NCBI RefSeq assembly: GCF_006345805.1
Contig: NC_043018.1
Span: 20,894,001 to 20,958,000 of the forward strand
Source: Octopus sinensis
Taxonomy: Eukaryota
Direction of reading: 5' to 3'
DNA length: 64,000 bases
The position numbers were made by a program, and so were the translations under genes. The notes below the pieces were generated by a model that was not told where the DNA came from, made no database searches, and worked only from the letters and a program-made list of their open reading frames with translations. Of this stretch, positions 4,513 to 58,471 are shown one piece after another. Each line of letters starts with the position of its first letter. Positions within the stretch are counted from its first letter, which is position 1.

Positions 4513-4578
4513 TTGACAGAAGACTCTTCTGGCCATATCTTCATAAAAAACTCCAACGATGATACGAGCATCCTGCCT
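4513..4578 (-). CDS. GABBR1: GABBR1 coding exon 5 (absent from the ORF track)
   Basis: ttacag|[22 protein letters not shown]|gtatgt; 66 nt, phase 0-0; matches human [22 protein letters not shown]. Confidence 0.96.
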
Positions 4579-4707
4579 CTGTAATAGAGAAAAATGGAAT
4601 AACTAGAACTATATATACATAGATGAAGGAGTGGTTGTATATATATATATGTGTATATAGATAAATGAAAGAATGGAGTCGAACGACGATTTAACAAAAT
4701 TCCTTTA

Positions 4708-4790
4708 TTCTCGACATATGTTTCGAAGACTGCATATTCTTAATTCCGAAGGAATAAAGGGTGCATTATGCCGTCTTCTCATCAGGAAAG
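4708..4790 (-). ncRNA. Type I hammerhead ribozyme motif with intact core (repeat-borne), sense within GABBR1 intron 4
   Basis: CUUUC CUGAUGA GAAGAC..GUCUUC GAAA CAUAUG UC GAGAA: core CUGAUGA/GAAA/GUC, 6-bp stem II extended by GCAUA/UAUGC, palindromic ACAUAUGU stem III, 4-bp stem I. Confidence 0.75.
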
Positions 4791-4868
4791 ACAAGGAACT
4801 TATGTCAGCATCATGACGAACAAACACTTTTAGATGACTGCCCACACGGAGTTCATAGTGATAATGTG

Positions 4869-4899
<31 letters not shown>

Positions 4900-5639
4900 A
4901 TGCATGTATGTATGTATGTATATACTTTGGTAAATGGAAAAGAAGCACTTACTTTTAAGTGTTATCAATTACTTAAAATTAATTGAAACAAACAGAAGTA
5001 TGATAAGTAAAAGGTTGAAGTGATCTAAATCAAAGCTCCCCATCAAAATTTCACGTTAATTTATGTTTAAAACACTAGCTTCATCAAGACAAAGTTATTT
5101 TACCAAATTCTTCCTTATTTTCAAAATCAATGCTAACAAAGAAAGTACATTTCAATAGAAACCTTGTAACAAATGGATTAAAGCAAATGTCTTTTATAGA
5201 CAGACATTTATAAATAACACCTTCTTAACAGTGAAATAGAAAAGATATCTTTTTTAACCCAATATGAATAACAGAGACATAAAGAGTTAAATAACTTGTC
5301 TAAGGACAAGCGGTGATTCTGGTAACAGACATAACATTTGGATGATGCTGTGGTGTTACTACTGATGGTGACTTCACAAATGACGGCACCAGAGCTTGCC
5401 ACAATCAAAACTTTCAGCAATGGTTTAACATTCGTTGTTTTATGTTTGAAATAGTTGCTACTTTTTAGTCACATTTCATATCACACTTCATGTCTAGTCT
5501 CAACCCCTCTCGGTTGTGACCATCCTGTGAGTTTCTTCTCTGGGAAAGTTTCTCACCAAGGTACAAGTACTTAACGAGGTTATTTGTGGAAAACAGGCTG
5601 TTGCCCATAGCAGCCAGCACTATTCCACAGCAAACAATG

Positions 5640-6286: not shown

Positions 6287-6388
6287 CTTTAAATTTTTAA
6301 CGGCGTTCGTTGGATCAGTCAAAAAACTTTGACGTACAGCAATGTCGATATTGGCTTCCTTGACTTTTCTCTCTAAATCGTCGATTGT
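6287..6388 (-). CDS. GABBR1: GABBR1 coding exon 4
   Basis: tttcag|TIDDLERKVKEANIDIAVRQSFLTDPTNAVKNLK|gtaatg; 102 nt, phase 0-0. Confidence 0.97.
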
Positions 6389-7081: not shown

Positions 7082-7885
7082 TAGGTTTTCTGTTTGTAAT
7101 TATGTAAGTGCAGGAGTGGCTGTGTGGTAAGTGGCTTGCTTCCCAACCACATGGTTCCATGTTCAGTCCCACTGCATGGCACCTGGGTAAGTGTCTTTTA
7201 CTATAGCCTCGGGCCGACCAAAGCCTTGTGAGTGGATTTGGTAGATGGAGTCTGAAAGAAGCCCATCGTATATGTGTGTGTGTGATAGACAGATGGATAG
7301 ATAAACAGATATAGATGTATACTTCTTAGTTTCTGTCTACTAAATCCACTCACAGGATGCCATGCAGTGAGACTGAACCTGGGACCATGTTGTTGAGAAG
7401 CAAGCTTCTTATCACACAGCCATGCCTGTACCTATATATATATGTATGTATGTATATGTATATATATATATATATAATATATATATATATAATATATATA
7501 TATAAATTAGGTTTTCTGTTTGTAATTATGTAAGTGCAGGAGTGGCTGTGTGGTAAGTGGCTTGCTTCCCAACCACATGGTTCCATGTTCAGTCCCACTG
7601 CATGGCACCTTGGGTAAGTGTCTTTTACTATAGCCTCGGGCCGACCAAAGCCTTGTGAGTGGATTTGGTAGATGGAGTCTGAAAGAAGCCCATCGTATAT
7701 GTGTGTGTGTGATAGACAGATGGATAGATAAACAGATATAGATGTATACTTCTTAGTTTCTGTCTACTAAATCCACTCACAGGATGCCATGCAGTGAGAC
7801 TGAACCTGGGACCATGTTGTTGAGAAGCAAGCTTCTTATCACACAGCCATGCCTGTACCTATATATATATGTATGTATGTATATG

Positions 7886-10838: not shown

Positions 10839-11437
10839 CAGAAATAATATATTCTCAAATGCATGATAATGCTAATATAATAGCATGAACAGGAAAAACT
10901 ATCCATGTATTGCAGACTAAAATCATTACCAGCCAGCCATGAGACTCGAACTCACATCCCTGTGATTACGTGCCAAGTGCTTTACCTTTAAGCTAAACTG
11001 CCCAGTAACAAATTTATAAATCCCAAAATTGCAGAGCAATTCGTTACTTGGCAGTTTAGCTTAACCCTTTAGTGTTCAGATTATTCTATGAAACATAATG
11101 CTTATTGATTCCCATTGATTTGAATTAATCATGCATTATCTCATATCCTCAAGATCTTGATGGTGTAATTACTTAATGTAGAATAACATTGTAGGGTAGG
11201 TGTGAGAGCCTGGATCTGGTCAGTTTGAACATAAAACAGATTAACTATTTTGGCCGGATATGGCCGGTTGAAATACTAAAGGGTTAAAGGTAAAGCACTT
11301 GACATGTAATCACAGGGATGTGAGTTTGAGTCTCATGGCTGGCTTGTAACAAATTTTTTTCTGCAATATATAGATAATTTATCCTGTTCATGCTATTGTA
11401 TTAGCATTATCATGCGTTTGAGAATAAATTATTTCTG
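10839..11437. repeat. Palindromic element with tRNA-like inner ends (arms 10839-11009 and 11043-11437)
   Basis: The arms are reverse complements once the MITE at 11061-11287 is removed; 33-bp spacer. Confidence 0.85.
11061..11287. mobile_element. piggyBac-type MITE P1, inverted relative to 10384-10610
   Basis: TTAA duplication shown by the empty site in the opposite arm of the host palindrome (10988-10991). Confidence 0.9.
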
Positions 11438-16627: not shown

Positions 16628-17249
16628 CATCATGTTTCTAACAAAGAACTACGTGTACACACACATCACATCACAGCCTCCTACCTCATAGGTAGTGGTG
16701 GTATTGGTGGTGGTGGTGGTGGCAGAGGTGATTATGGTGGTAGTGACAATGTTGATGATGGTGGTGGTGGTGACAATATTGATGATGGTGGTTGTGGTGA
16801 TGGTGATGACGATGATGATGTTGATAATATTGATTGTTTTCCTGCCATGAAAAAAAATTTTCCAAGTAAAGCTCAGCAAAATATATTTCCAAGATTAAGA
16901 TAATCATCTCAGTTTTAAAAGTCACACAGATAACAATTAAATGGATCTTCTTAACATTTTATTAATTCTTTTTATCTCGTTCCTATCCAAATCAAAACAT
17001 AATTTCTACACTTGTCATTCCTAAATGTCTTCAGTCGACGTTTAGAAACAACATTTGCTTCTCAGGAATTTCTTTTTTTTCTCTTTAGTAGCATTTTTTT
17101 TCATTTTTCTTTTTGTTTTCGTTTCGTTTCGTCTCACTTTGTGGGAGGAAATCTGACAAGTTGGATTAAAGTCTGACGGAGGGAAAGAAAAAAAAGATCA
17201 GTACGTGACATTAATGCTTATATAGATCCTTAAGATAATAGACAACAGG

Positions 17250-18465
17250 TGATGGTGGCAGTGGTGGAGGTGGTGGTGGTGGTCTTGGTGGTAGTGGTGG
17301 TGTAGCAGAGGAGCAGGGATGGGGAAGGAGGGAGGGGATGCGGTGTGGCGGAAGAATAGGAGGGTGATGAAGAGGGGAGGAATATGAGGCTGATGATGAG
17401 GAGGGTGAGAAGGAGGAGGAGGATGAGGAAGAAGAAGAAGAAGAAGAGGAGGAGGAGGAGGAGGAGGAAGAAGAAGAGGAGGAGGAGGGGAGGAGGAGGG
17501 GAGGAGGAGGAAGTGGAGGAGGAGGATGTGGAGGAGGAGGAAGAAAAAGAGGGTGAGGAGAGGAGGAGGAGGGTGAGGAGATGAGGAGGAGGAAGAGGAG
17601 GGTGAGGAAGATGAGGAGGAGGAAGAGAGGGGTGAGAAGAGGAGGAGGAGGAGGAAGAAGAAGAAGAAGAAGGAAGAGGAGGAGGAGGAAGACGAAGAAG
17701 AGGAGAAGAGGAGGAGGGGAGGGTTGATTGAAGAGGAGGAGGTGGAGGAGGAGGAAGAAGAAGAGGAGCAGAAGAGGAGGAGAGAGAGAAGAAGAAGAAG
17801 AGGAGAGGAGGAGGAGGGTGATGAAGAGGAGGAGGTGGAGAGGAGGAGGAGAAGAAGAGGAAGCAGAAGAGGAAGGAGGAAAGAAGAGAAGAAGAAGAGG
17901 AGGAGGAGGAGGTGATGAAGAGGAGGAGGTGGAGGAGGAGGAAGAAGAAGAGGAAGCAGAAGAGGAGGAGAGAGAAGAAGAAGAAGAAGAAGAGGAGGAG
18001 GAGGAGGGTGATGAAGAGGAGGAGGTGGAGGAGGAGGAAGAAGAAGAGGAAGCAGAGAGAGGGGAGAGGAGAGAGAGAAGAAGAAGAAGGAGGAGGCGGG
18101 AGGAAGGAGGAGGAGAGGAGGGTTGTGGGTGAGAGAAAAGAGAGAGGAGGAGGTGGAGGAGGAGGAAGGAAGAAGAGGGGAGGAAAAAGAAGAGAAGGAA
18201 GAAGAGCAGTAAGAGAGGAAGGGAAGAAGAAGAAGAAAGAGAAGAAGAAGAAGGAAGAAGAGAAGAGAGGAGGGAAGAAAGAAGAAGAAGAAAGAAAAAG
18301 AAGAAAGAAAGAGGAAGGGGAAGAGAAAAGAAGAAGAAGAGAAAAGAAGAAGAAGAAGAAGAAGAAGAGAGAAGAAGAAGAGGAGGGAAGGAGGAGGAGG
18401 AGGAGGAGGAAGAAGAAGAAGAAGAAGAAGAAGAAGAAGAGGTGGAAGAAGAGGAGGAATGGTTA
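17250..18465. repeat. About 1.2-kb polypurine (GAG/GAA)n low-complexity tract
   Basis: Almost pure A/G on the plus strand; a higher-order unit GGTGATGAAGAGGAGGAGGTGGAG recurs at 17810-18060. Confidence 0.95.
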
Positions 18466-18779
18466 AGCAGCCTCTCCTAGCTGTATTCTCCAGCCTACAG
18501 AGAGAAACTGAAAGCAATCCCATTTTCCTCAAATCACACTGCTTGCCCACTTTTCAAAAGGTTAACTACAGAACATCACTTCCCTCTCTGCTCCTCTCAC
18601 CTTCTTGTTTCATTAAAATGGGATTTGAAGACAATGATGAGGTCTTGGCTGTAAGGAAAAGGTCTGTCTGCAGTACCTTCAGTCATGTCTACCACATATC
18701 TTTTGCCATAGACACTAGAATGAAGAAAATTCTCCCCTTGCTAACCAAAAGAAAATGATGGGCAACGATCTTCCTGGTG

Positions 18780-19940: not shown

Positions 19941-21299
19941 TGACAATGGGATTATACCTAGAAAGTTACCTTCCAAGAAACAAGTTGGGCAAGGTTGTTT
20001 ATGGAAGACCAGCAGTCACCTATGCATACCAGCCTCCCCTATCCATGCCACTGATGTTATCCAAGGGAGACGAAAAGGGGCCGACACAGTTTGGCATCAG
20101 TGATGTTGGAACTCATTTCTACAGCTGAGTGAACTGGAGCAGCGTGAAATAAAGTGTCTTGCTCAAGAACACAACACGCAGCCTGGTCCAGGAATGAAAT
20201 TCACTGTATCACGACTGTGAACCAACCTGATGTTCTAACGACCGAGTCATGCGCCTTCACAATGGTCACCTGCTAAATTCCTTGCTGAACTCATTACCAA
20301 TTCTAACTCTGCTGACTGCATCTTTGTATATGTCTAGTGTGGTTCTCACAAACCATTCACCATCATCATCATCATTACCATCATTTTAATGTTCATGTTT
20401 CCATGTTTCTGTGATTGGACAGATTTTATTGAAGCAGATTTTCTACAACCTGATGCCCTTCCTGTTGCCAACCCTTATCACTTTCAAGGCTAAAGTAATA
20501 TTTCCCCCTAGTTAGGTATGCTTTTTGCAGACTACTGGAAATGAAAGACACTGCTTATATAACCATGACTCTCCTTTACAACAGTCATGTGATGTCAAGA
20601 CACACACAACAGGCTTCTTTCAGTTTCCATCCTTCAAATCCACTCACCTCACAAGGCTTTTCTCAGAGCAGTGCCATAGAAGACACTTGCCCAAGATGCC
20701 ACTCAGTGGAACTGAACCCAGAACCACATGGTTGGGAAGTAAAGTTCATAATCACACAGCCATGCCTGAATTTTCACACGGGTTTTCTTAATGACCACCA
20801 GATTACAAAACACTATGTCCAGTCAAAGGACTTCACCAGATCAACAAAAGCTAGTACAGTGAAATTCTCCCATGATTATTTCAGTAGCAAGATGGTATCA
20901 GCCATGCCCTGCCTTGACACAAAGCATCATAACTAAGTTAAACCATCCATCCAGCTTCTGCCCCCGACTATTCCTAGCAGGGTTGTGGGGTAGAGTCCTC
21001 AGGCACCTCCTCCATAGGGTCCTATCAGCAAAAACTGTCGTTACACTTCTGGCTGGGTTCCCAAGCATGACCAACTGAGACTTTTGCCTTTTCTTTTACT
21101 TGTTTCAGTCATTTGACTGTGGCCATGCTGCAGCACCACCCTGAAGAGTTTTAGTCAAGCAAATTGACCCCAAGGCTTTTTTTTTTTAAGCCTAGTATTT
21201 ATTCTAATGGTCTCTTTTGCTGAACCACTAAGCTATGGGGATATAAACATACCAGCACTGATTGTCAAGCAGTAGTTGGGGACAAACACACACACACAC

Positions 21300-39584: not shown

Positions 39585-39652
39585 TATATATATATAAGTA
39601 AATATATCATCGTAATTGTTATAATGTCTTGTTGTTGAGATAGGCTCTCTTT

Positions 39653-39735
39653 CTTTCCTGATGAGAAGATTGCATTTTACACCGTTTATTCCTTTCGAAT
39701 AAAACCAATGTTGTCTTCGAAACATATGTCGAAAG
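39653..39735 (+). ncRNA. Type I hammerhead ribozyme motif with intact core, second copy of the same repeat
   Basis: CUUUC CUGAUGA GAAGAU..GUCUUC GAAA CAUAUG UC GAAAG: perfect 5-bp stem I, inner hairpin UUUAUUC/GAAUAAA. Confidence 0.78.
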
Positions 39736-39964
39736 TAAAAGAATTTTAATAACATCTTCGTTCAACTCCATTTATTTACTTATACTACACAAATTACTAC
39801 ACATTAACCCGGAGTTTCTACCTTTGAATAGGTCGCTTCATCCATGTTACTTGAGTGAATTTTGCTGCCCTGGTAACTGTTTATTGAATTTTTCATGTTA
39901 ACGGTAAACAAAGGATAATTCATTCATCCATTTAAATATATATATATATATTCAGATGAATATA

Positions 39965-40388
39965 TATTTATCTTTTTATATGTGGTTGAAACATGGGCTA
40001 CCACAAAGAGAGAAGAGCAAAGACTGATAATGGCTCAAAGAGCCATGGAAAGGTCAATGCTTGGTATCTCGTTGAGAGAGCACATAAATAGCAACATCAT
40101 CAGAAAGAAGTCCGGCGTGAGAGATGTCATCGCAGAGTATACTCGCAGCAAGTATAGATGGGCTGGACACGTCGCCCGGCTCACCAATAATCGGTGGACG
40201 CACGCAGTTGTCGAGTGGTACCTGCGTGAGCGGAAAAGACCTCCACGACGGTGGAGTGACGATTTCAAGAGGACGATTGGGATCACGTGGATGAGAAAGG
40301 CGTGATCCAGAGAGGAGCGGATAGCGTGCTGTGACCAGCGGTGTCAAATGGATGCCTGACGGACTGGTCGGTCAAAGTGATCAAAGTG
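39965..40388 (+). mobile_element. 5'-truncated RTE LINE with 17-bp TSD
   Basis: ETWATTKREEQRLIMAQRAMERSMLGISLREH...RWAGHVAR...RWSDD; (CAAAGTGAT)2 tail; TSD ATATTCAGATGAATATA at 39948-39964 and 40389-40405. Confidence 0.92.
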
Positions 40389-40665
40389 ATATTCAGATGA
40401 ATATAGTACTTAAGTTGAAGGCACCAAAATTCAGTATGGTATCATCCATACAATTTAAAATAAGGTGCCACTTCATGAAGAGTTATAGAGTCATGAAGTG
40501 GCACATGCCATTTTAAATTCTTCTGAATTTTGTAATTCATGTATTCACTTGATGAAAACAGTTTTTTCTAACGATTTAATGTCTCCATTAATTAGTTAAA
40601 AATACATTGGAAACAGCTATAGTGGATTGACACATTGTCCATCTGTTGTTATTCATATATATATA

Positions 40666-41053
40666 GGTGTGGGAGTGGCTGTGTGGTAAGTAGCTTGCTT
40701 ACGAACCACATGGTTCCGGTTCAGTCCCACTGCATGGCACCTTGGGCAAGTGTCTCCTACTATAGCCTCGGGCCAACCAAAGCCTTGTGAGTGGATTTGG
40801 TAGATAGAAACTGAAAGAAGCCTGTCGTATATATGTGTGTGTATGTTTGTGTATCTGTGTTTGTCCCCCCAACAAACATTGACAACCAATGGTGGTGTGT
40901 TTACGTCCCCGTAACTTAGCAGTTTGGTAAAAGAGACTGATAAAATAAGTACTAGGCTTACAAAGAATAAGTCCTGGGGTCAATTTGCTCGACTAAATGC
41001 GGTGCTCCAGCATGGCCACAGTCAAATGACTGAAACAAGTAAAAGAGTAAAGA
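40666..41053 (+). mobile_element. SINE family A, full length
   Basis: Direct match to 1253-1659. Confidence 0.88.
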
Positions 41054-41651: not shown

Positions 41652-44067
41652 TATATATGAATTTCAACCATCAATGTTTTGGTTTGGGCATATGAAAAAT
41701 AAGAGAAGCAAACCAGTGGACTTTTCAAAGCATATGCTATGATAAGAATCAAGAATATGTTCTTGCTGGGAAAGCACCTCCACACACTTTTGTAAACTAC
41801 TGTGTTGCTTATAAGCTTTTATGAAATCCCACTTGACTCATTTCTCTTTACTAAAAACCCCTCCTTCCCACCAGATACCACAATTTCCTTTATGAAATTT
41901 CTCGTTGACAAAGGCTGAAAAGCACAAATACTTGTTCAAATATTATCATTGTCATTGTCTTCTACACTGGCATTGGTTGGACAGATCAACAGGATCTTGT
42001 ACGAGGACTGTGTCATGATCCTATATCTGTTTTGGCATGGTTCCTACAAATAGACACTCTTCCTGATGCCAACCACTTTACAGAGTGTATTGGGTGCTTT
42101 TTTTTTCTTGGCACTAGCACCTGATGAAAGCTGGAGGGTATATCAACTGAAACATGTTAACAGCAAACAAGATGAGGACAAATATCCGTCAAATGTAAAT
42201 AATGAAAATGTTTTAATTACTGTAATTTAATTCTTTGAGAAAAATCGCAACAGCTACAAGAGAATATGCTGGATTTTTGCAGTTAATAAATTATATTAAT
42301 GCTGCATCTCCATTTTCTGAATTTTAATTTGAATAATTATAAACTAAGATTTATACTTAAACTTATTATTTTTTATAAATATTACTCTTTTACTTGTTTC
42401 AGTCATTTGACTGCGGCCATGCTGGAGCACCACCTTTTAGTCGAGTAAATCGACCCCAGGACTTATTCTTTGTAAGCCTAATACTTATTCTATCGGTCTC
42501 TTTTGCTGAACTGCTAAGTTATGGGGATGTAAACACACCACCATCGATTATCAAGCAATGGTGGGGGAACAAACACAGACACACAAACGTATACACACAT
42601 ACATATATACGGCGGGCTTCTTCCAGTTCCCGTCTACCAAGTAACTCACAAAACAAGACTCCTTGATTGAGCAATGCCGTAGTGCTGAAGGAGTGGGCTC
42701 TATACTAGGTGTTGAGAGGTTAAGGTATGATAGGGGGACAGGAACACTGAAGAGGAAATATATGGTTACGCCATCTAGAAAGAGAGAAAAGAGATTGTGG
42801 TGATAAGGGATCAGAGCATACCCACAGGTTACAAGAAGGTGACACAAGCAGACAGACAGAATAGGGACAGAGGATCAGAAAGAATGGGTAGATGGGTAAG
42901 TTTGAATACAGGTAGAGGTGTAGTCAGTGAGGAATATCAGTTCTGAGTGGGGAGACAGTAGAAGAAATAGGAGTGGGTCAGGAAGGAAAAGGGAGAGGAG
43001 AAGAAGGCTGTAAGTTTCAGTACAAAATGAAGCCAATAAGGTGGAGAGTAACAACATAACAAAATTATCTATTTAAAGTCTTGAAAACTTTTAGTTTAAT
43101 TTAACTTAAAACTCTTTACAAAAAAAGGACTTGAACCTTTTCCTTAAAGATCAAAACTTTATATGCCCATACACCAATTATCAATTTATAAAATATATAT
43201 CATAAAAATTTATATATTGTTTATAAATTTCATTTATAAAAGTCGTTAGTTTAATAAAAATATTTAAATTACACAGAATATTTTAATGATGCTTATCTTA
43301 CTTTATAAACATCAATTTTTTCAAAACCAATGGAGATTTCATGTGATTGTCTTATTATATAAATTATTGTGACAGAGATGGAGGTCTGAGGAATGTAGGG
43401 ATGAAAATAGCAAGTGACAAACAAAGATGGAGGGTTTGTCGAGGGCAGATATGAGGGTATGCCCAGAGGGAAGGTGTTCAGTGAAAAATTAAGTGGTAAG
43501 AGATAATATTGAGAATAGATAATTTATTGATTTCAAATTTTGGCTCAAGTCCTAGAGAGGTGTTAAGTCACTTATTTTATCAACCCCCTTAAATGATGAT
43601 TGAGAAAATGTAAGAACTATGGTTCAAATCTTTGCCAGGTTCTTGCCACACTGTCTCTAATGTTGATTGAAAGCTTCAAATTCCTAAAACTTTTGCTTTA
43701 AAAAAAATCAGTTTTAGCTGGGTGCTCATGGTTTGCGTATTTTTAAGTTTTTACTCGTTTGTTTTGCTAATTCAAGGAAAATCAAGTTAGATTTTTATAT
43801 TTCCCATTGTCACACCCTAATTTCAATAACATTACCGATAAATTTTAGGGAATAGGAAAAAGAGTCAACAAGCCTATGTGACTGGAAGTTGTAACTGAAA
43901 TGCTTGCAACTAGGCGTGGCTATGTGGTAAGTAGCTTACTTCCCAACCACATGGTTCTGGGTTTGGTCCCATTGTGTGACACCTTGGGCCAACAAAAGCC
44001 TCGTGAGTGGATTTGGTAGATGGGAACTGAAAGATATATATATATATCTGTGTATATGTCTACGTGT

Positions 44068-49619: not shown

Positions 49620-50150
49620 GGGTTGATGCTCTGAGAGCGTAGCTGCTAGAATAAGAATATTCTCTGGGCAAAGTTCAGAGAGCTTCTACTTCTGCTGGTA
49701 ACAAAGGGTCTCTCGCTCAGAGTGAAAGGTAGACTGTATGATGCTTGTGTGTGAACAGCCATGCTACACAGCAGTGAAACATGGGCCACGGCTGCCGAGG
49801 ACATGCATAGGCTCAAAAGAAATGAAGCTAGTATGCTCCACTGTATGCGTAATGTCAGTGTGCATACACAACAAAGTGTAAGCGCCCTGAGAGAAACGTT
49901 GGACATAAGAAGCATCAGATGTGGTGCGCAAGAGAGATGACTGTGCTGGTGTGGTCATGTGCTACATATGGATGAGGACAGCTGTGTGAAAAAGTGTCAC
50001 ACCATAACAGTGGATTGAACCTGTGGTAGAGGTAGACCTGGGATGAGATAGTGAAGTACGACCTTCGAACGTTGGGCCTAGCAGAGGCAATGACAAGGGG
50101 CTGACCTTTGGAGACATGCTGTGCTTGAGAAGACCCAGCTAGCCAAGAGA
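49620..50150 (+). mobile_element. RTE LINE 3' fragment
   Basis: WAKFRELLLLLVTKGLSLRVKGRLYDACV*TAMLHSSETWA...LRETLDIRSIRCG...WCGHVLHMDEDSCVKKC...WDEIVKYDLRTLGL. Confidence 0.85.
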
Positions 50151-50305
50151 GATCATATCCGTGGCCGGAAGTTGTTGTTCGCAAACAATAGCAGTAATTT
50201 TCTTCAGCTGAATACACGTCATTGATTGGTTGAAATTACCCAAATACGACAAATTTGACACGAAATAACTTCTAAAATACAAACTTTTTTCAAAAATGCT
50301 AAGAA

Positions 50306-50658
50306 GTAGCTTGCTAACCAACCACATGGTTCCGGGTTCAGTCCCACTGCGTGGCATCTTGGGCAAGTGTCTTCTGCTATAGCCCCAGGCCGACCAATGC
50401 CTTGTGAGTGGATTTGGTAGACAGAAACTGAAAGAAGCCTGTCGTATATATGTATGTGTGTGTGTGTTTGTCCCCCTAGCATTGCTTGACAACCGATGCT
50501 GGTGTGTTTACATCCCCGTCACTTAGCGGTTCGGCAAAAGAGACTGATAGAATAAGTACTGGGCTTACAAAGAATAAGTCCCGGAGTCGATTTGCTCGAC
50601 TAAAAGGCGGTGCTCCAGCATGGCCAGTCAAATGACTGAAACAAGTAAAAGAGTAAAA
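50306..50658 (+). mobile_element. SINE family A inserted in a Merlin-like MITE remnant
   Basis: Flanks (50215-50305, 50660-50757) resemble the interior and end of the 22295-22733 element. Confidence 0.75.
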
Positions 50659-52069: not shown

Positions 52070-52162
52070 TTAATCACATTTCACTTCGGCTGGCTTCTTC
52101 TTTTTTGTCATTTTCTTCAAGAGAACAGCTCCAACAATGGTACCATAAACAGCAGCAACACA
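52070..52162 (-). CDS. ATP5MK: ATP5MK last coding exon
   Basis: 116-nt intron, then ttgtag|CVAAVYGTIVGAVLLKKMTKKKKPAEVKCD*. Human is CVLATYGSIALIVLYFKLRSKKTPAVKAT. Total 60 aa. Confidence 0.92.
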   Translation of the reverse strand, partial: CVAAVYGTIVGAVLLKKMTKKKKPAEVKCD

Positions 52163-52278
52163 CTACAAAGAAGAAAAGAAAGAAAGAAAGAAACGATGAA
52201 CCCAAGGCATTTCAGTGAGGAGGGGTGGGCGGAGGATGGATGTATAACAGCGAAGGGGAGAGAACTCCATTTACTTAC

Positions 52279-52368
52279 ATTGAAACGTCCTCGACGGGTG
52301 TAAGAATTGAAATAGTATTTCATGCCGGTAAACCCGGTTTCGGCCTCTGAGAGAAATCCGCCAGCCAT
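52279..52368 (-). CDS. ATP5MK: ATP synthase membrane subunit K (USMG5/DAPIT), first coding exon
   Basis: Acceptor ttttggaag| at 52378, 9 nt of UTR, then MAGGFLSEAETGFTGMKYYFNSYTRRGRFN|gtaagt. Human is MAGPESDAQYQFTGIKKYFNSYTLTGRMN. Confidence 0.93.
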
Positions 52369-52414
52369 TGTAGTAACCTTCCAAAAAAAAAAAAGAGTAA
52401 GAAAATATAAATAG

Positions 52415-52800
52415 GCGCAGGAGTGGCTGTGTGGTAAGTAGCTTGCTAACCAACCACATGGTTCTGGGTTCAGTCCCACTGCGTGGCATCTTGGGCAAGT
52501 GTCTTCTGCTATAACCCTGGGCCGACCAATGCCTTGAGAGTGGATTTGGTAGACGGAAACTGAAAGAAGCCTGTCGTATATATGTATATGTTTGTGTGTC
52601 TGTGTTTGTTCCCCTAGCATTGCTTGACAACCGATGCTGGTGTGTTTACGTCCCCGTCACTTAGCGGTTCAGCAAAAGAGACCGATAGAATAAGTACTGG
52701 GCTTACAAAGAATAAGTCCCGGGGTCGATTTGCTCGACTAAAAAAAGGCGGTGCTCCAGCATGGCCGCAGTCAAATGACTGAAACAAGTAAAAGAGAGAG
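52415..52800 (+). mobile_element. SINE family A immediately upstream of the ATP5MK acceptor
   Basis: Full copy; its head lies about 36 nt from the AG at 52378. Confidence 0.88.
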
Positions 52801-57789: not shown

Positions 57790-58471
57790 AAATAATGTTT
57801 TCTTTTGATACATTCTACCAGTATACGAAGTTTTAAAGTGTTTAGTTAACTAGAAATTGTGTTGAAAACTGCCGTTCAAAAGGAAAAGATCTTTTCAACA
57901 CAATATCTAGTTAACTTAAACACTTTAAAACTTCGTGTACTGGTAGAATGTGTGAAAAGAAAACATTATTTTCGGATCTTTTCCTTTTGAACGGCAGTTT
58001 TCAACACAATTTCTAGTTAACTAAACACTTTAAAACTTCGTATACTGGTAGAATGTGTCAAAAGAAAACATTATTTTCACTTAATGTTTTCTTTTGACAC
58101 ATTCTACCAGTATACGAAGTTTTAAAGTGTTTAGTTAACTAGAAATTGTGTTGAAAATTGCCATTCAAAAGGAAAAGATCCCATAAAAATTGTTATTTTG
58201 CTATAATTGCATTTTAGAAGTTTGTTAATAACTGTCTTGAAAATATCAATATTTAAATAAACTTAATGATTTAATTAGATAACATCTGAAATTCGAAAAT
58301 ATTAATTGTGTACTAACTCAATAGGAAAAGATCCCATAAAAATTGTTATTTTGCTATAATTGCATTTTAGTAGTTTGTTAATAACTGTCTGAAAATATCA
58401 ATGTTTAAATAAACTTAATGATTTAATTAGTTAACATCTGAAATTCGAAAATATTTGTTGTGTACTAACTC
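57790..58471. repeat. Alternating inverted copies of a MITE terminus followed by a tandem duplication of about 150 bp
   Basis: A unit of about 100 bp in F-R-R-F order (57790-58181), then 58170-58320 repeated at 58323-58471. Confidence 0.85.

What the first reader, a model, noticed from the sequence alone, without database searches (positions are those of the whole stretch)
4708..4790. Intact hammerhead ribozyme motif in the sense strand of GABBR1 intron 4
Seen: the minus strand reads CUUUC-CUGAUGA-GAAGAC G GCAUA (30 nt) UAUGC A GUCUUC-GAAA-CAUAUG-UC^GAGAA. All conserved core positions are present: C3-A9, G12-A15.1, G10.1-C11.1 and a GUC triplet. Stem III is the 8-nt palindrome ACAUAUGU. The predicted cut (4713/4712) is 134 nt upstream of the exon 5 acceptor, on the transcribed strand. 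Established: minimal hammerheads with short palindromic stem III are associated with Penelope-like retroelements and can cleave as dimers; intronic hammerheads are known in amniote genes such as RECK. Inference: a retroelement-derived self-cleaving RNA in a neurotransmitter-receptor pre-mRNA. It could cut the intron co-transcriptionally and, if dimerisation is needed, respond to transcript concentration or to trans partners from other genomic copies.
Basis: partly seen in the sequence, partly recalled or inferred. Interest (0 to 1): 0.8.

Follow-up and report, generated by a model that had tools for sequence, protein, structure and literature searches.

The report
Retroelement hammerhead motif in octopus intron
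The sequence really is a complete hammerhead-ribozyme motif on the transcribed strand of an octopus GABA-B receptor intron, but it belongs to a short mobile element that landed there recently, so it is an ordinary transposon relic and not a conserved gene regulator.

Summary
Window 4790-4708 (minus strand) carries every conserved hammerhead core position. Helices I, II and III are all present. The predicted cut at 4713/4712 lies 134 nt upstream of coding exon 5 (4578-4513) of a GABA-B receptor subunit 1 gene. The window is identical to Octopus sinensis over 21.7 kb.

The motif is not chance: a strict descriptor found 2 hits in the window and none in 300 shuffles.

It is part of a repeat of about 180 nt. 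A second copy lies at 39626-39794 on the opposite strand, 76% identical, with the catalytic boxes 100% conserved and two compensatory pair changes.

The intronic copy sits inside a 324-nt insertion (4960-4637). That insertion is present in O. sinensis and O. vulgaris. O. bimaculoides has a clean empty site, and Argonauta hians has no copy in the intron. Between O. sinensis and O. vulgaris the motif diverges at the neutral intron rate (2/85 against 35/1705).

Related copies occur as head-to-head 5'-truncated pairs, as described for Penelope-like elements.

Helix III is only 2 bp plus a tetraloop. The predicted dimer Kd is tens of micromolar. No Rfam hammerhead model matches. Efficient cleavage, or concentration sensing by the pre-mRNA, is therefore unlikely.

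Verdict: a real motif, a new member of a known kind, of low interest.

The parts
4708..4790 (-). Type I hammerhead motif, copy A. Helix I 5' strand 4790-4786, extendable to 4800. CUGAUGA 4785-4779. Helix II 4778-4725: 6 bp, a G.A mismatch, 5 bp, then a distal hairpin. GAAA 4724-4721. Helix III palindrome ACAUAUGU 4721-4714. C17 at 4713, cut 4713/4712. Helix I 3' strand 4712-4708, extendable to 4698.
4652..4832 (-). Repeat unit of about 180 nt that carries the hammerhead. It is homologous to copy B and to copies in O. vulgaris and O. bimaculoides.
4637..4960 (-). Lineage-specific 324-nt insertion. It consists of a 128-nt 5' part with an internal (CA)n(TA)n, whose first ~35 nt resemble the unit's own 3' end; then the 180-nt unit; then a (TA)n tail. 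O. bimaculoides has an exact empty site, GATAAC|AACCAC.
4513..4578 (-). GABBR1 coding exon 5 ([22 protein letters not shown]). The acceptor AG is at 4580-4579.
6287..6388 (-). GABBR1 coding exon 4. Intron 4 is 6286-4579.
39626..39794 (+). Copy B of the same repeat, on the opposite strand and about 15 kb upstream of the GABBR1 ATG exon. Its hammerhead has C3 at 39658 and C17 at 39730, a 5-bp helix I, and an intact core.

Best explanation
The motif is the hammerhead ribozyme of a short (about 180 nt), non-coding, AT-rich retroelement family of Octopus. The family looks like a non-autonomous derivative of Penelope-like elements, or a monomer of a non-LTR retrozyme.

One copy inserted, as part of a 324-nt insertion, 58 nt upstream of the exon 5 acceptor of GABBR1. 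This happened in the common ancestor of O. sinensis and O. vulgaris, after the split from O. bimaculoides.

The ribozyme served the element's own RNA processing, and that is why its core is conserved among divergent copies. In the intron it is a passenger. The catalytic core is intact. However, helix III is only 2 bp closed by an AUAU loop, and there is no recognisable loop-loop tertiary contact. As a lone monomer it should therefore cleave slowly or not at all. Nothing indicates an effect on GABBR1 splicing.

Shown: the motif, the repeat family, the insertion polymorphism between species, and neutral divergence. Inferred: the element class, weak catalysis, and neutrality.
For: - Motif and gene context.
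- Not chance: 0 of 300 shuffles against 2 observed.
- Second copy, 76% identical over 173 nt (E 8e-31). The blocks TCTTTCCTGATGAGAAGA and GTCTTCGAAACATATGTCGA are 38/38 identical. By my arithmetic, 0.76^38 is about 3e-5, a post hoc figure.
- 94% of cells are paired, against 38-47% when the partners are slid. There are two compensatory double changes, C-G to U-A in helix I and A-U to U-A in helix II.
- A third full copy in O. bimaculoides (L006 37444-37334) turns the helix II mismatch into a U-A pair and changes two further pairs on both sides.
- Orthologous site: the window is identical to O. sinensis over 21,711 nt. The element is present in O. vulgaris with an intact core. The window's joined flanks align without a gap to O. 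bimaculoides. The covariance model finds nothing in intron 4 of O. bimaculoides or Argonauta.
- Divergence between O. sinensis and O. vulgaris: intron 35/1705 = 2.05%, insert 6/324, motif 2/85.
- Penelope-like hallmarks: head-to-head 5'-truncated copies (L004 47527-47740, L005 45224-45353), and an inverted truncated copy abutting a full copy in L006. Such arrangements are described for these elements in PMC8557442 and PMC4209133.
- The architecture (helix II of at least 6 bp, helix I of 4-5 bp, short palindromic helix III) fits the Penelope and metazoan type I descriptions, and those motifs have low in vitro activity (PMC4209133).
- Intronic monomers are commonplace: 42-44% of Xenopus retrozyme copies overlap introns (bioRxiv 10.64898/2026.07.22.740005).
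- Folding: helices I+II form in 10% (A) and 69% (B) of the ensemble. With helix III added, the fractions are 0.15% and 1%.
Against: - No autonomous Penelope-like ORF (RT plus GIY-YIG) was found in the window or the fetched loci. No tandem array was seen. The element class is therefore inferred from arrangement only.
- Invertebrate type I hammerheads with a 2-bp helix III plus tetraloop are reported to cleave efficiently (PMC7229834), so monomer activity cannot be excluded.
- Nearest-neighbour folding ignores tertiary structure.
- Neutral divergence over only 85 nt has little power.
- Only about 220 kb of Octopus DNA could be searched, so copy number and orientation bias are unknown.
Confidence: 0.75

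Rival explanations
1. The motif is a domesticated intronic ribozyme. It cleaves GABBR1 pre-mRNA co-transcriptionally and tunes splicing or expression, possibly by dimerising with other transcripts.
For: - Sense orientation, 134 nt upstream of the acceptor, with an intact core.
- The core is retained in both O. sinensis and O. vulgaris.
- Conserved intronic hammerheads exist in amniotes (PMC6155905).
- The homodimer fold of copy B gives exactly the double-hammerhead with an 8-bp helix III.
Against: - Absent from the orthologous intron of O. bimaculoides (exact empty site) and of Argonauta.
- Divergence equals the neutral intron rate.
- The dimer free energy of about -6 kcal/mol implies a Kd of tens of micromolar.
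- No second sense copy with a core lies in the gene.
- No Rfam hammerhead, HH9 or HH10 match.
- From my own knowledge, not checked here: Dye et al. 2006 and Fong et al. 2009 reported that slow hammerheads placed in introns do not disturb splicing.
Confidence: 0.05
2. The element is a SINE-like retroposon, mobilised by a LINE or driven by pol III, that happens to carry a hammerhead, like Sm-alpha of Schistosoma. On this reading it is not a Penelope-dependent element or retrozyme.
For: - Defined unit of about 180 nt with a shared 3' end and a (TA)n tail that is part of the insertion.
- A B-box-like GTTCGACTCC at 4678-4669.
- The O. vulgaris genome holds hundreds of unclassified SINE families (PMC13282606).
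- A LINE RT tail lies next to copy B.
Against: - No A box and no tRNA-like head. The Rfam tRNA hits lie elsewhere.
- Head-to-head 5'-truncated copies are a Penelope hallmark (PMC8557442).
- Animal type I hammerheads are linked to Penelope-like elements (PMC4209133, bioRxiv 10.64898/2026.07.22.740005).
Confidence: 0.2
3. The resemblance to the hammerhead consensus is a chance match in AT-rich intron sequence.
For: No Rfam hammerhead model matches. A relaxed descriptor gives about 0.11 chance hits per window.
Against: - The strict descriptor gives 0 of 300 shuffles against 2 observed.
- The two sites are homologous, with perfectly conserved catalytic boxes and compensatory changes.
- Further copies exist in other Octopus genomes.
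Confidence: 0.01

Closest known systems
Minimal or atypical type I hammerheads of Penelope-like elements (Cervera & De la Pena 2014, PMC4209133)
   Same: - Conserved core with G10.1-C11.1.
- Long helix II (at least 6 bp) and short helix I (4-5 bp) with an ill-defined loop 1.
- Short palindromic helix III, which suggests action as a dimer.
- Mostly solitary dispersed copies.
- Pairs on opposite strands close together.
   Different: [quoted passage not shown]
- Helix II is far longer: 54 nt between G10.1 and C11.1, in three paired segments.
- No RT/GIY-YIG ORF or terminal repeat was seen near any copy.
Metazoan non-LTR retrozymes (Cervera & De la Pena 2020, PMC7229834; Li, Clavereau & Pollet 2026, bioRxiv 10.64898/2026.07.22.740005)
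   Same: - Type I hammerhead.
- Unit size within the 170-400 nt range.
- Low GC (33-37% in the motif).
- Helix III of 2 bp plus a tetraloop, as in invertebrate and Amex2 motifs.
- Dispersed monomers, many of them in introns.
   Different: - No tandem repeat was observed in about 220 kb.
- Circular RNA was not tested.
- Copies share defined ends and a (TA)n tail, and are not permuted.
Conserved intronic hammerheads of amniotes (HH9 in RECK, HH10; De la Pena & Garcia-Robles 2010, cited in PMC6155905)
   Same: A type I hammerhead in the sense strand of an intron, thought to derive from retroelements.
   Different: - Those are conserved across birds and mammals and have canonical loop-loop contacts.
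- This one is absent from a congeneric species, evolves neutrally, and matches no Rfam model.
Sm-alpha SINE-like element of Schistosoma mansoni
   Same: A short non-autonomous retroelement carrying a type I hammerhead.
   Different: Sm-alpha has a pol III promoter and a fast canonical ribozyme with tertiary contacts. Neither is evident here.

Membership tests
Hammerhead ribozyme, type I | Conserved core: C3-U4-G5-A6-N7-G8-A9, G12-A13-A14, the A15.1-U16.1 pair, the G10.1-C11.1 pair, and H17 not G | tested here: met
   All are present in copies A and B and in the O. vulgaris orthologue.
Hammerhead ribozyme, type I | Three helices around the core, with helix I open-ended | tested here: met
   Helix I is 4 bp in A and 5 bp in B, with an extension. 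Helix II is 6+5+7 bp. Helix III is 2 bp plus AUAU. 94% of cells are paired and there are 2 compensatory changes. With only 2-3 independent sequences the statistics are weak (139 of 500 shuffles).
Hammerhead ribozyme, type I | Match to a curated covariance model (Rfam Hammerhead_1, _3, _II, HH9, HH10) | tested here: not met
   No hit at gathering score or at E<=10 on 201-301 nt around either copy. The 54-nt helix II and minimal helix III probably explain this, but that was not tested.
Hammerhead ribozyme, type I | Mg2+-dependent self-cleavage 3' of position 17, giving 2',3'-cyclic phosphate and 5'-OH ends | not testable with these tools
   Needs in vitro transcription or end mapping.
Penelope-like element hammerhead | Location in the terminal repeats of an element encoding RT plus GIY-YIG endonuclease | tested here: not met
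   There is no such ORF in the window. The fetched loci show the short copies without any long element around them. A genome-wide search was not possible.
Penelope-like element hammerhead | Insertion signatures: inverted 5'-truncated copies, partial tandems, microsatellite association | tested here: met
   Head-to-head truncated pairs occur in L004, L005 and L006. There is a possible partial tandem at the 5' end of the insert (p=0.004). A (TA)n tail lies inside the insert.
Penelope-like element hammerhead | [quoted passage not shown] | tested here: not met
   CUGAUGA is followed directly by G10.1, which pairs with C11.1.
Non-LTR retrozyme | Head-to-tail tandem repeats of 170-400 nt, each with a type I hammerhead | tested here: not met
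   The covariance-model search of the window and four loci finds only solitary or inverted copies. Unit size and GC do fit.
Non-LTR retrozyme | Expression as linear and circular RNA of unit length | not testable with these tools
   No transcript data are available here.
Conserved (domesticated) intronic hammerhead | Presence at the orthologous intron position across species, under purifying selection | tested here: not met
   O. bimaculoides has an empty site. Argonauta has none. Divergence is neutral between O. sinensis and O. vulgaris.

The most novel reading that the evidence does not exclude
The insertion gave the O. vulgaris/O. sinensis lineage a catalytically active, sense-strand ribozyme 134 nt upstream of a GABBR1 acceptor. 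It cuts a fraction of nascent transcripts, perhaps helped by abundant trans RNAs from other copies of the family. It thereby changes splicing or output of a neurotransmitter-receptor gene in a species-specific way.
Probability: 0.04. Interest if true: 0.6.

Novelty: new member of a known kind. Interest (0 to 1): 0.2.

Why it matters
Hammerhead motifs in animal retroelements number in the thousands per genome, and many lie in introns. One more such copy does not change what is known.

Three modest points are of value:
- Octopus genomes carry a hammerhead-bearing short element family with an unusually long helix II that the Rfam models miss. Ribozyme censuses of cephalopods would therefore undercount it.
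- The GABBR1 copy is a cleanly dated presence/absence polymorphism between Octopus species. It offers a natural test of whether a sense-strand intronic hammerhead affects splicing.
- The head-to-head truncated copies link the family to Penelope-type insertion.

Tried and rejected
- Rfam at gathering score and at E<=10: no hammerhead hit.
- Searching the protein database with antisense ORFs that overlap the element, to fish other copies: no candidates.
- Exact-pattern scans of metagenome contigs and viral contigs: nothing, apart from three hits in one unrelated repeat that has no helix II complementarity. These are chance matches.
- A covariance model built from the two copies and run over the whole window with filters off: only the two copies. 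The other hits are plain hairpins such as 58033-58122.
- A third relaxed-descriptor hit at 35452-35366 (helices of 4, 3 and 4 bp) is at chance level.
- Pfam scan of long open frames for a Penelope RT or GIY-YIG domain: none.
- A tRNA-derived SINE head was considered because of a B-box-like GTTCGACTCC. There is no A box and no tRNA-like fold, so this was kept only as a minor rival.
- The idea that the element targeted a pre-existing (TA)n was rejected. The empty site in O. bimaculoides has no TA repeat, so the (TA)n belongs to the insert.

Full report
**1. Observation**

Read on the minus strand, window 4790-4708 is cuuuc-CUGAUGA-GAAGAC-g-GCAUA-(30 nt)-UAUGC-a-GUCUUC-GAAA-CAUAUG-UC^GAGAA. Every invariant hammerhead position is present:
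- C3-A9 at 4785-4779.
- G10.1 and C11.1 closing a 6-bp helix II.
- G12-A14 and A15.1 at 4724-4721.
- U16.1 at 4714 and C17 at 4713.

Helix I is 4 bp (C-G, U-A, U-G, U-A). After a 3x3 internal loop it continues for 8 more pairs, 4800-4793 with 4705-4698. Helix II continues beyond a G.A mismatch with 5 bp and then a distal hairpin, so 54 nt lie between G10.1 and C11.1. Helix III is A-U and C-G closed by AUAU, that is, the 8-nt palindrome ACAUAUGU.

**2. Gene context**

Stop-free frames on the minus strand contain GABA-B-receptor-like peptides. The exon next to the motif matches human GABBR1 residues 192-213, with E 8.8e-6 against 0.4 for GABBR2.

Six phase-0 exons with GT-AG borders lie at 24708-24451 (ATG and signal peptide), 14399-14265, 12397-12227, 6388-6287, 4578-4513 and 3189-2998. 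Spliced, they give 308 aa that are 100% identical to an 891-aa 'gamma-aminobutyric acid type B receptor subunit 1-like' protein of O. vulgaris/O. sinensis.

The window is base-for-base identical to O. sinensis GCA_006345805.1 over 21,711 nt. 'Intron 4, exon 5, sense strand, 134 nt' is therefore correct for coding exons.

**3. More than chance**

A descriptor at the observed stringency gives 2 hits in the window and none in 300 dinucleotide shuffles. A relaxed version gives 3 hits against a mean of 0.11. Rfam finds no hammerhead at any threshold. The long helix II and minimal helix III are the likely reason, but I could not test that.

**4. It is a repeat**

The second descriptor hit is at 39658-39730 on the plus strand. 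blastn aligns 4817-4647(-) with 39626-39794(+) at 76% identity over 173 nt, E 8e-31.

The blocks TCTTTCCTGATGAGAAGA and GTCTTCGAAACATATGTCGA are identical in both copies, 38 of 38 positions. At 76% identity that has a probability of about 3e-5 (my arithmetic, post hoc). This implies that the ribozyme was under selection in the lineages of source elements.

Pair by pair, 94% of cells are standard pairs, against 38-47% when the partners are slid. Two pairs changed on both sides: C-G/U-A in distal helix I and A-U/U-A in helix II. Three pairs changed on one side and kept pairing. With two sequences this is not statistically decisive.

A covariance model built from the two copies finds no further true copy in the window.

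**5. Orthologous introns**

The protein cluster gave loci for O. sinensis (L004), O. vulgaris (L005), O. bimaculoides (L006) and Argonauta hians (L007). All six exons map in each locus.
- O. sinensis: the model scores 122.7 bits, identical to the window.
- O. vulgaris: 117.2 bits, with an intact core and two changes in the distal hairpin of helix II.
- O. bimaculoides and Argonauta: nothing in intron 4, even with filters off.

Joining the window's flanks across 4960-4637 gives a sequence that aligns without a gap to O. bimaculoides...GTAATTGATAAC|AACCACTC.... The motif therefore arrived in a 324-nt insertion after the O. bimaculoides split. That split is cited as 13-33 Myr ago in PMC13282606.

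Between O. sinensis and O. vulgaris:

| Region | Differences | Rate |
|---|---|---|
| Intron 4 | 35/1705 | 2.05% |
| Insert | 6/324 | 1.9% |
| Motif | 2/85 | 2.4% |

There is no sign of constraint, although the power is low.

**6. What kind of element**

The unit is about 180 nt (4832-4652), non-coding, with 33-37% GC in the motif. All copies share the 3' end ...CTCCATT..TTTAT followed by (TA)n. That (TA)n is part of the insert, because the empty site has none.

Other copies show a characteristic arrangement:
- L004 47527-47740, and its O. vulgaris orthologue, consist of two 5'-truncated copies joined head to head at the GCAUAAUGC palindrome of helix II.
- In O. bimaculoides L006 37560-37300, an inverted truncated copy directly abuts a full copy. 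Its core is CUGAAGA...GAAA...GUU and its helix II is a continuous 9-bp stem.

Inverted 5'-truncated copies, partial tandems and solitary dispersed hammerheads are described for Penelope-like elements (PMC8557442; PMC4209133). The first ~35 nt of the 324-nt insert resemble the unit's own 3' end plus tail, p = 0.004. This hints at a partial tandem.

O. vulgaris has many Penelope families. No RT/GIY-YIG ORF and no direct tandem array was seen in the roughly 220 kb available. I therefore call it a Penelope-type non-autonomous element, or a retrozyme monomer, by arrangement only. A SINE-like alternative stays open.

**7. How it likely works**

In the element's own transcripts the hammerhead would process multimeric or read-through RNA. 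That is the role proposed for Penelope and retrozyme hammerheads (PMC4209133, PMC7229834).

In the GABBR1 pre-mRNA only one sense copy with a core exists. Copy B is antisense and upstream of the ATG exon. The 3' copies lack the CUGAUGA box.

Folding gives helices I+II in 10% (A) and 69% (B) of the ensemble. All three helices form in only 0.15% and 1%.

The homodimer ensemble is about 6 kcal/mol more stable than two monomers, which corresponds to a Kd of tens of micromolar. One pre-mRNA per nucleus is in the picomolar range (my estimate). Self-dimerisation of GABBR1 transcripts is therefore implausible, and only abundant trans RNAs of the family could act as partners.

Penelope-type motifs cleaved poorly in vitro. 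Some invertebrate motifs with a 2-bp helix III are efficient when loop-loop contacts exist. No conserved contact is evident here: the helix II mismatch is G.A, U.U or a U-A pair in the three copies. I expect slow or no cleavage and no effect on splicing. This is inference, not a result.

**8. Comparison and verdict**

The motif works like, and is built like, the known type I hammerheads of animal retroelements. It fails the tests for a domesticated intronic ribozyme of the RECK kind (for that class).

In Xenopus, 42-44% of retrozyme copies overlap introns, so the location is unremarkable.

It is a real feature and a new member of a known kind. The long helix II is a minor variation, and the presence/absence difference between species is useful. 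Interest is low.

Noticed in passing
L004 47527-47740; L005 45224-45353; L006 37300-37560: Head-to-head inverted 5'-truncated copies of the hammerhead element, joined at the GCAUAAUGC palindrome of helix II. In O. bimaculoides an inverted truncated copy abuts a full copy whose core is CUGAAGA with H17 = U.
   Followed up: partly
window 4833-4960 (minus strand): The 5' part of the 324-nt insert starts with about 35 nt resembling the unit's own 3' end, followed by (CATA)n(CA)n(TA)n. This may be a partial tandem (p=0.004 against shuffles, but the sequence is low-complexity).
   Followed up: partly
window 52120-52656 (minus strand): A stop-free frame with a Pfam ATP_synth_reg (PF14960) match, E 4.5e-7. 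It looks like a DAPIT/USMG5-like exon upstream of GABBR1, so copy B lies between two genes.
   Followed up: no
window 10931-11002 (-) and 43116-43183 (-): Rfam tRNA matches just above the gathering score (31.0 and 30.8 bits against 29). They may be tRNA-derived SINE heads and not tRNA genes.
   Followed up: no
window 39990-40302 (+): An open frame resembling the C-terminal tail of a non-LTR (LINE) reverse transcriptase (...RWAGHVARL...RW...), about 200 nt downstream of copy B. It has no Pfam hit.
   Followed up: no
window 7353-7763, 20499-20933, 40656-40979, 50142-50507, 52120-52656 and others: A highly repeated element recognisable by frames such as EDTCPRCHAVGLNPEPCGW and SRRHLPKMPRSGTEPRTMWL, present at ten or more places on both strands.
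   Followed up: no
window 17201-18553: A 1.3-kb CT/GA-rich low-complexity tract that is open in several frames on both strands.
   Followed up: no
window 58033-58122: A near-perfect hairpin of about 90 nt. It scores on both strands with the structure model but has no hammerhead core.
   Followed up: no
window 4669-4678 (minus strand): GTTCGACTCC in the 3' part of the element resembles a pol III B box. No A box was found.
   Followed up: partly
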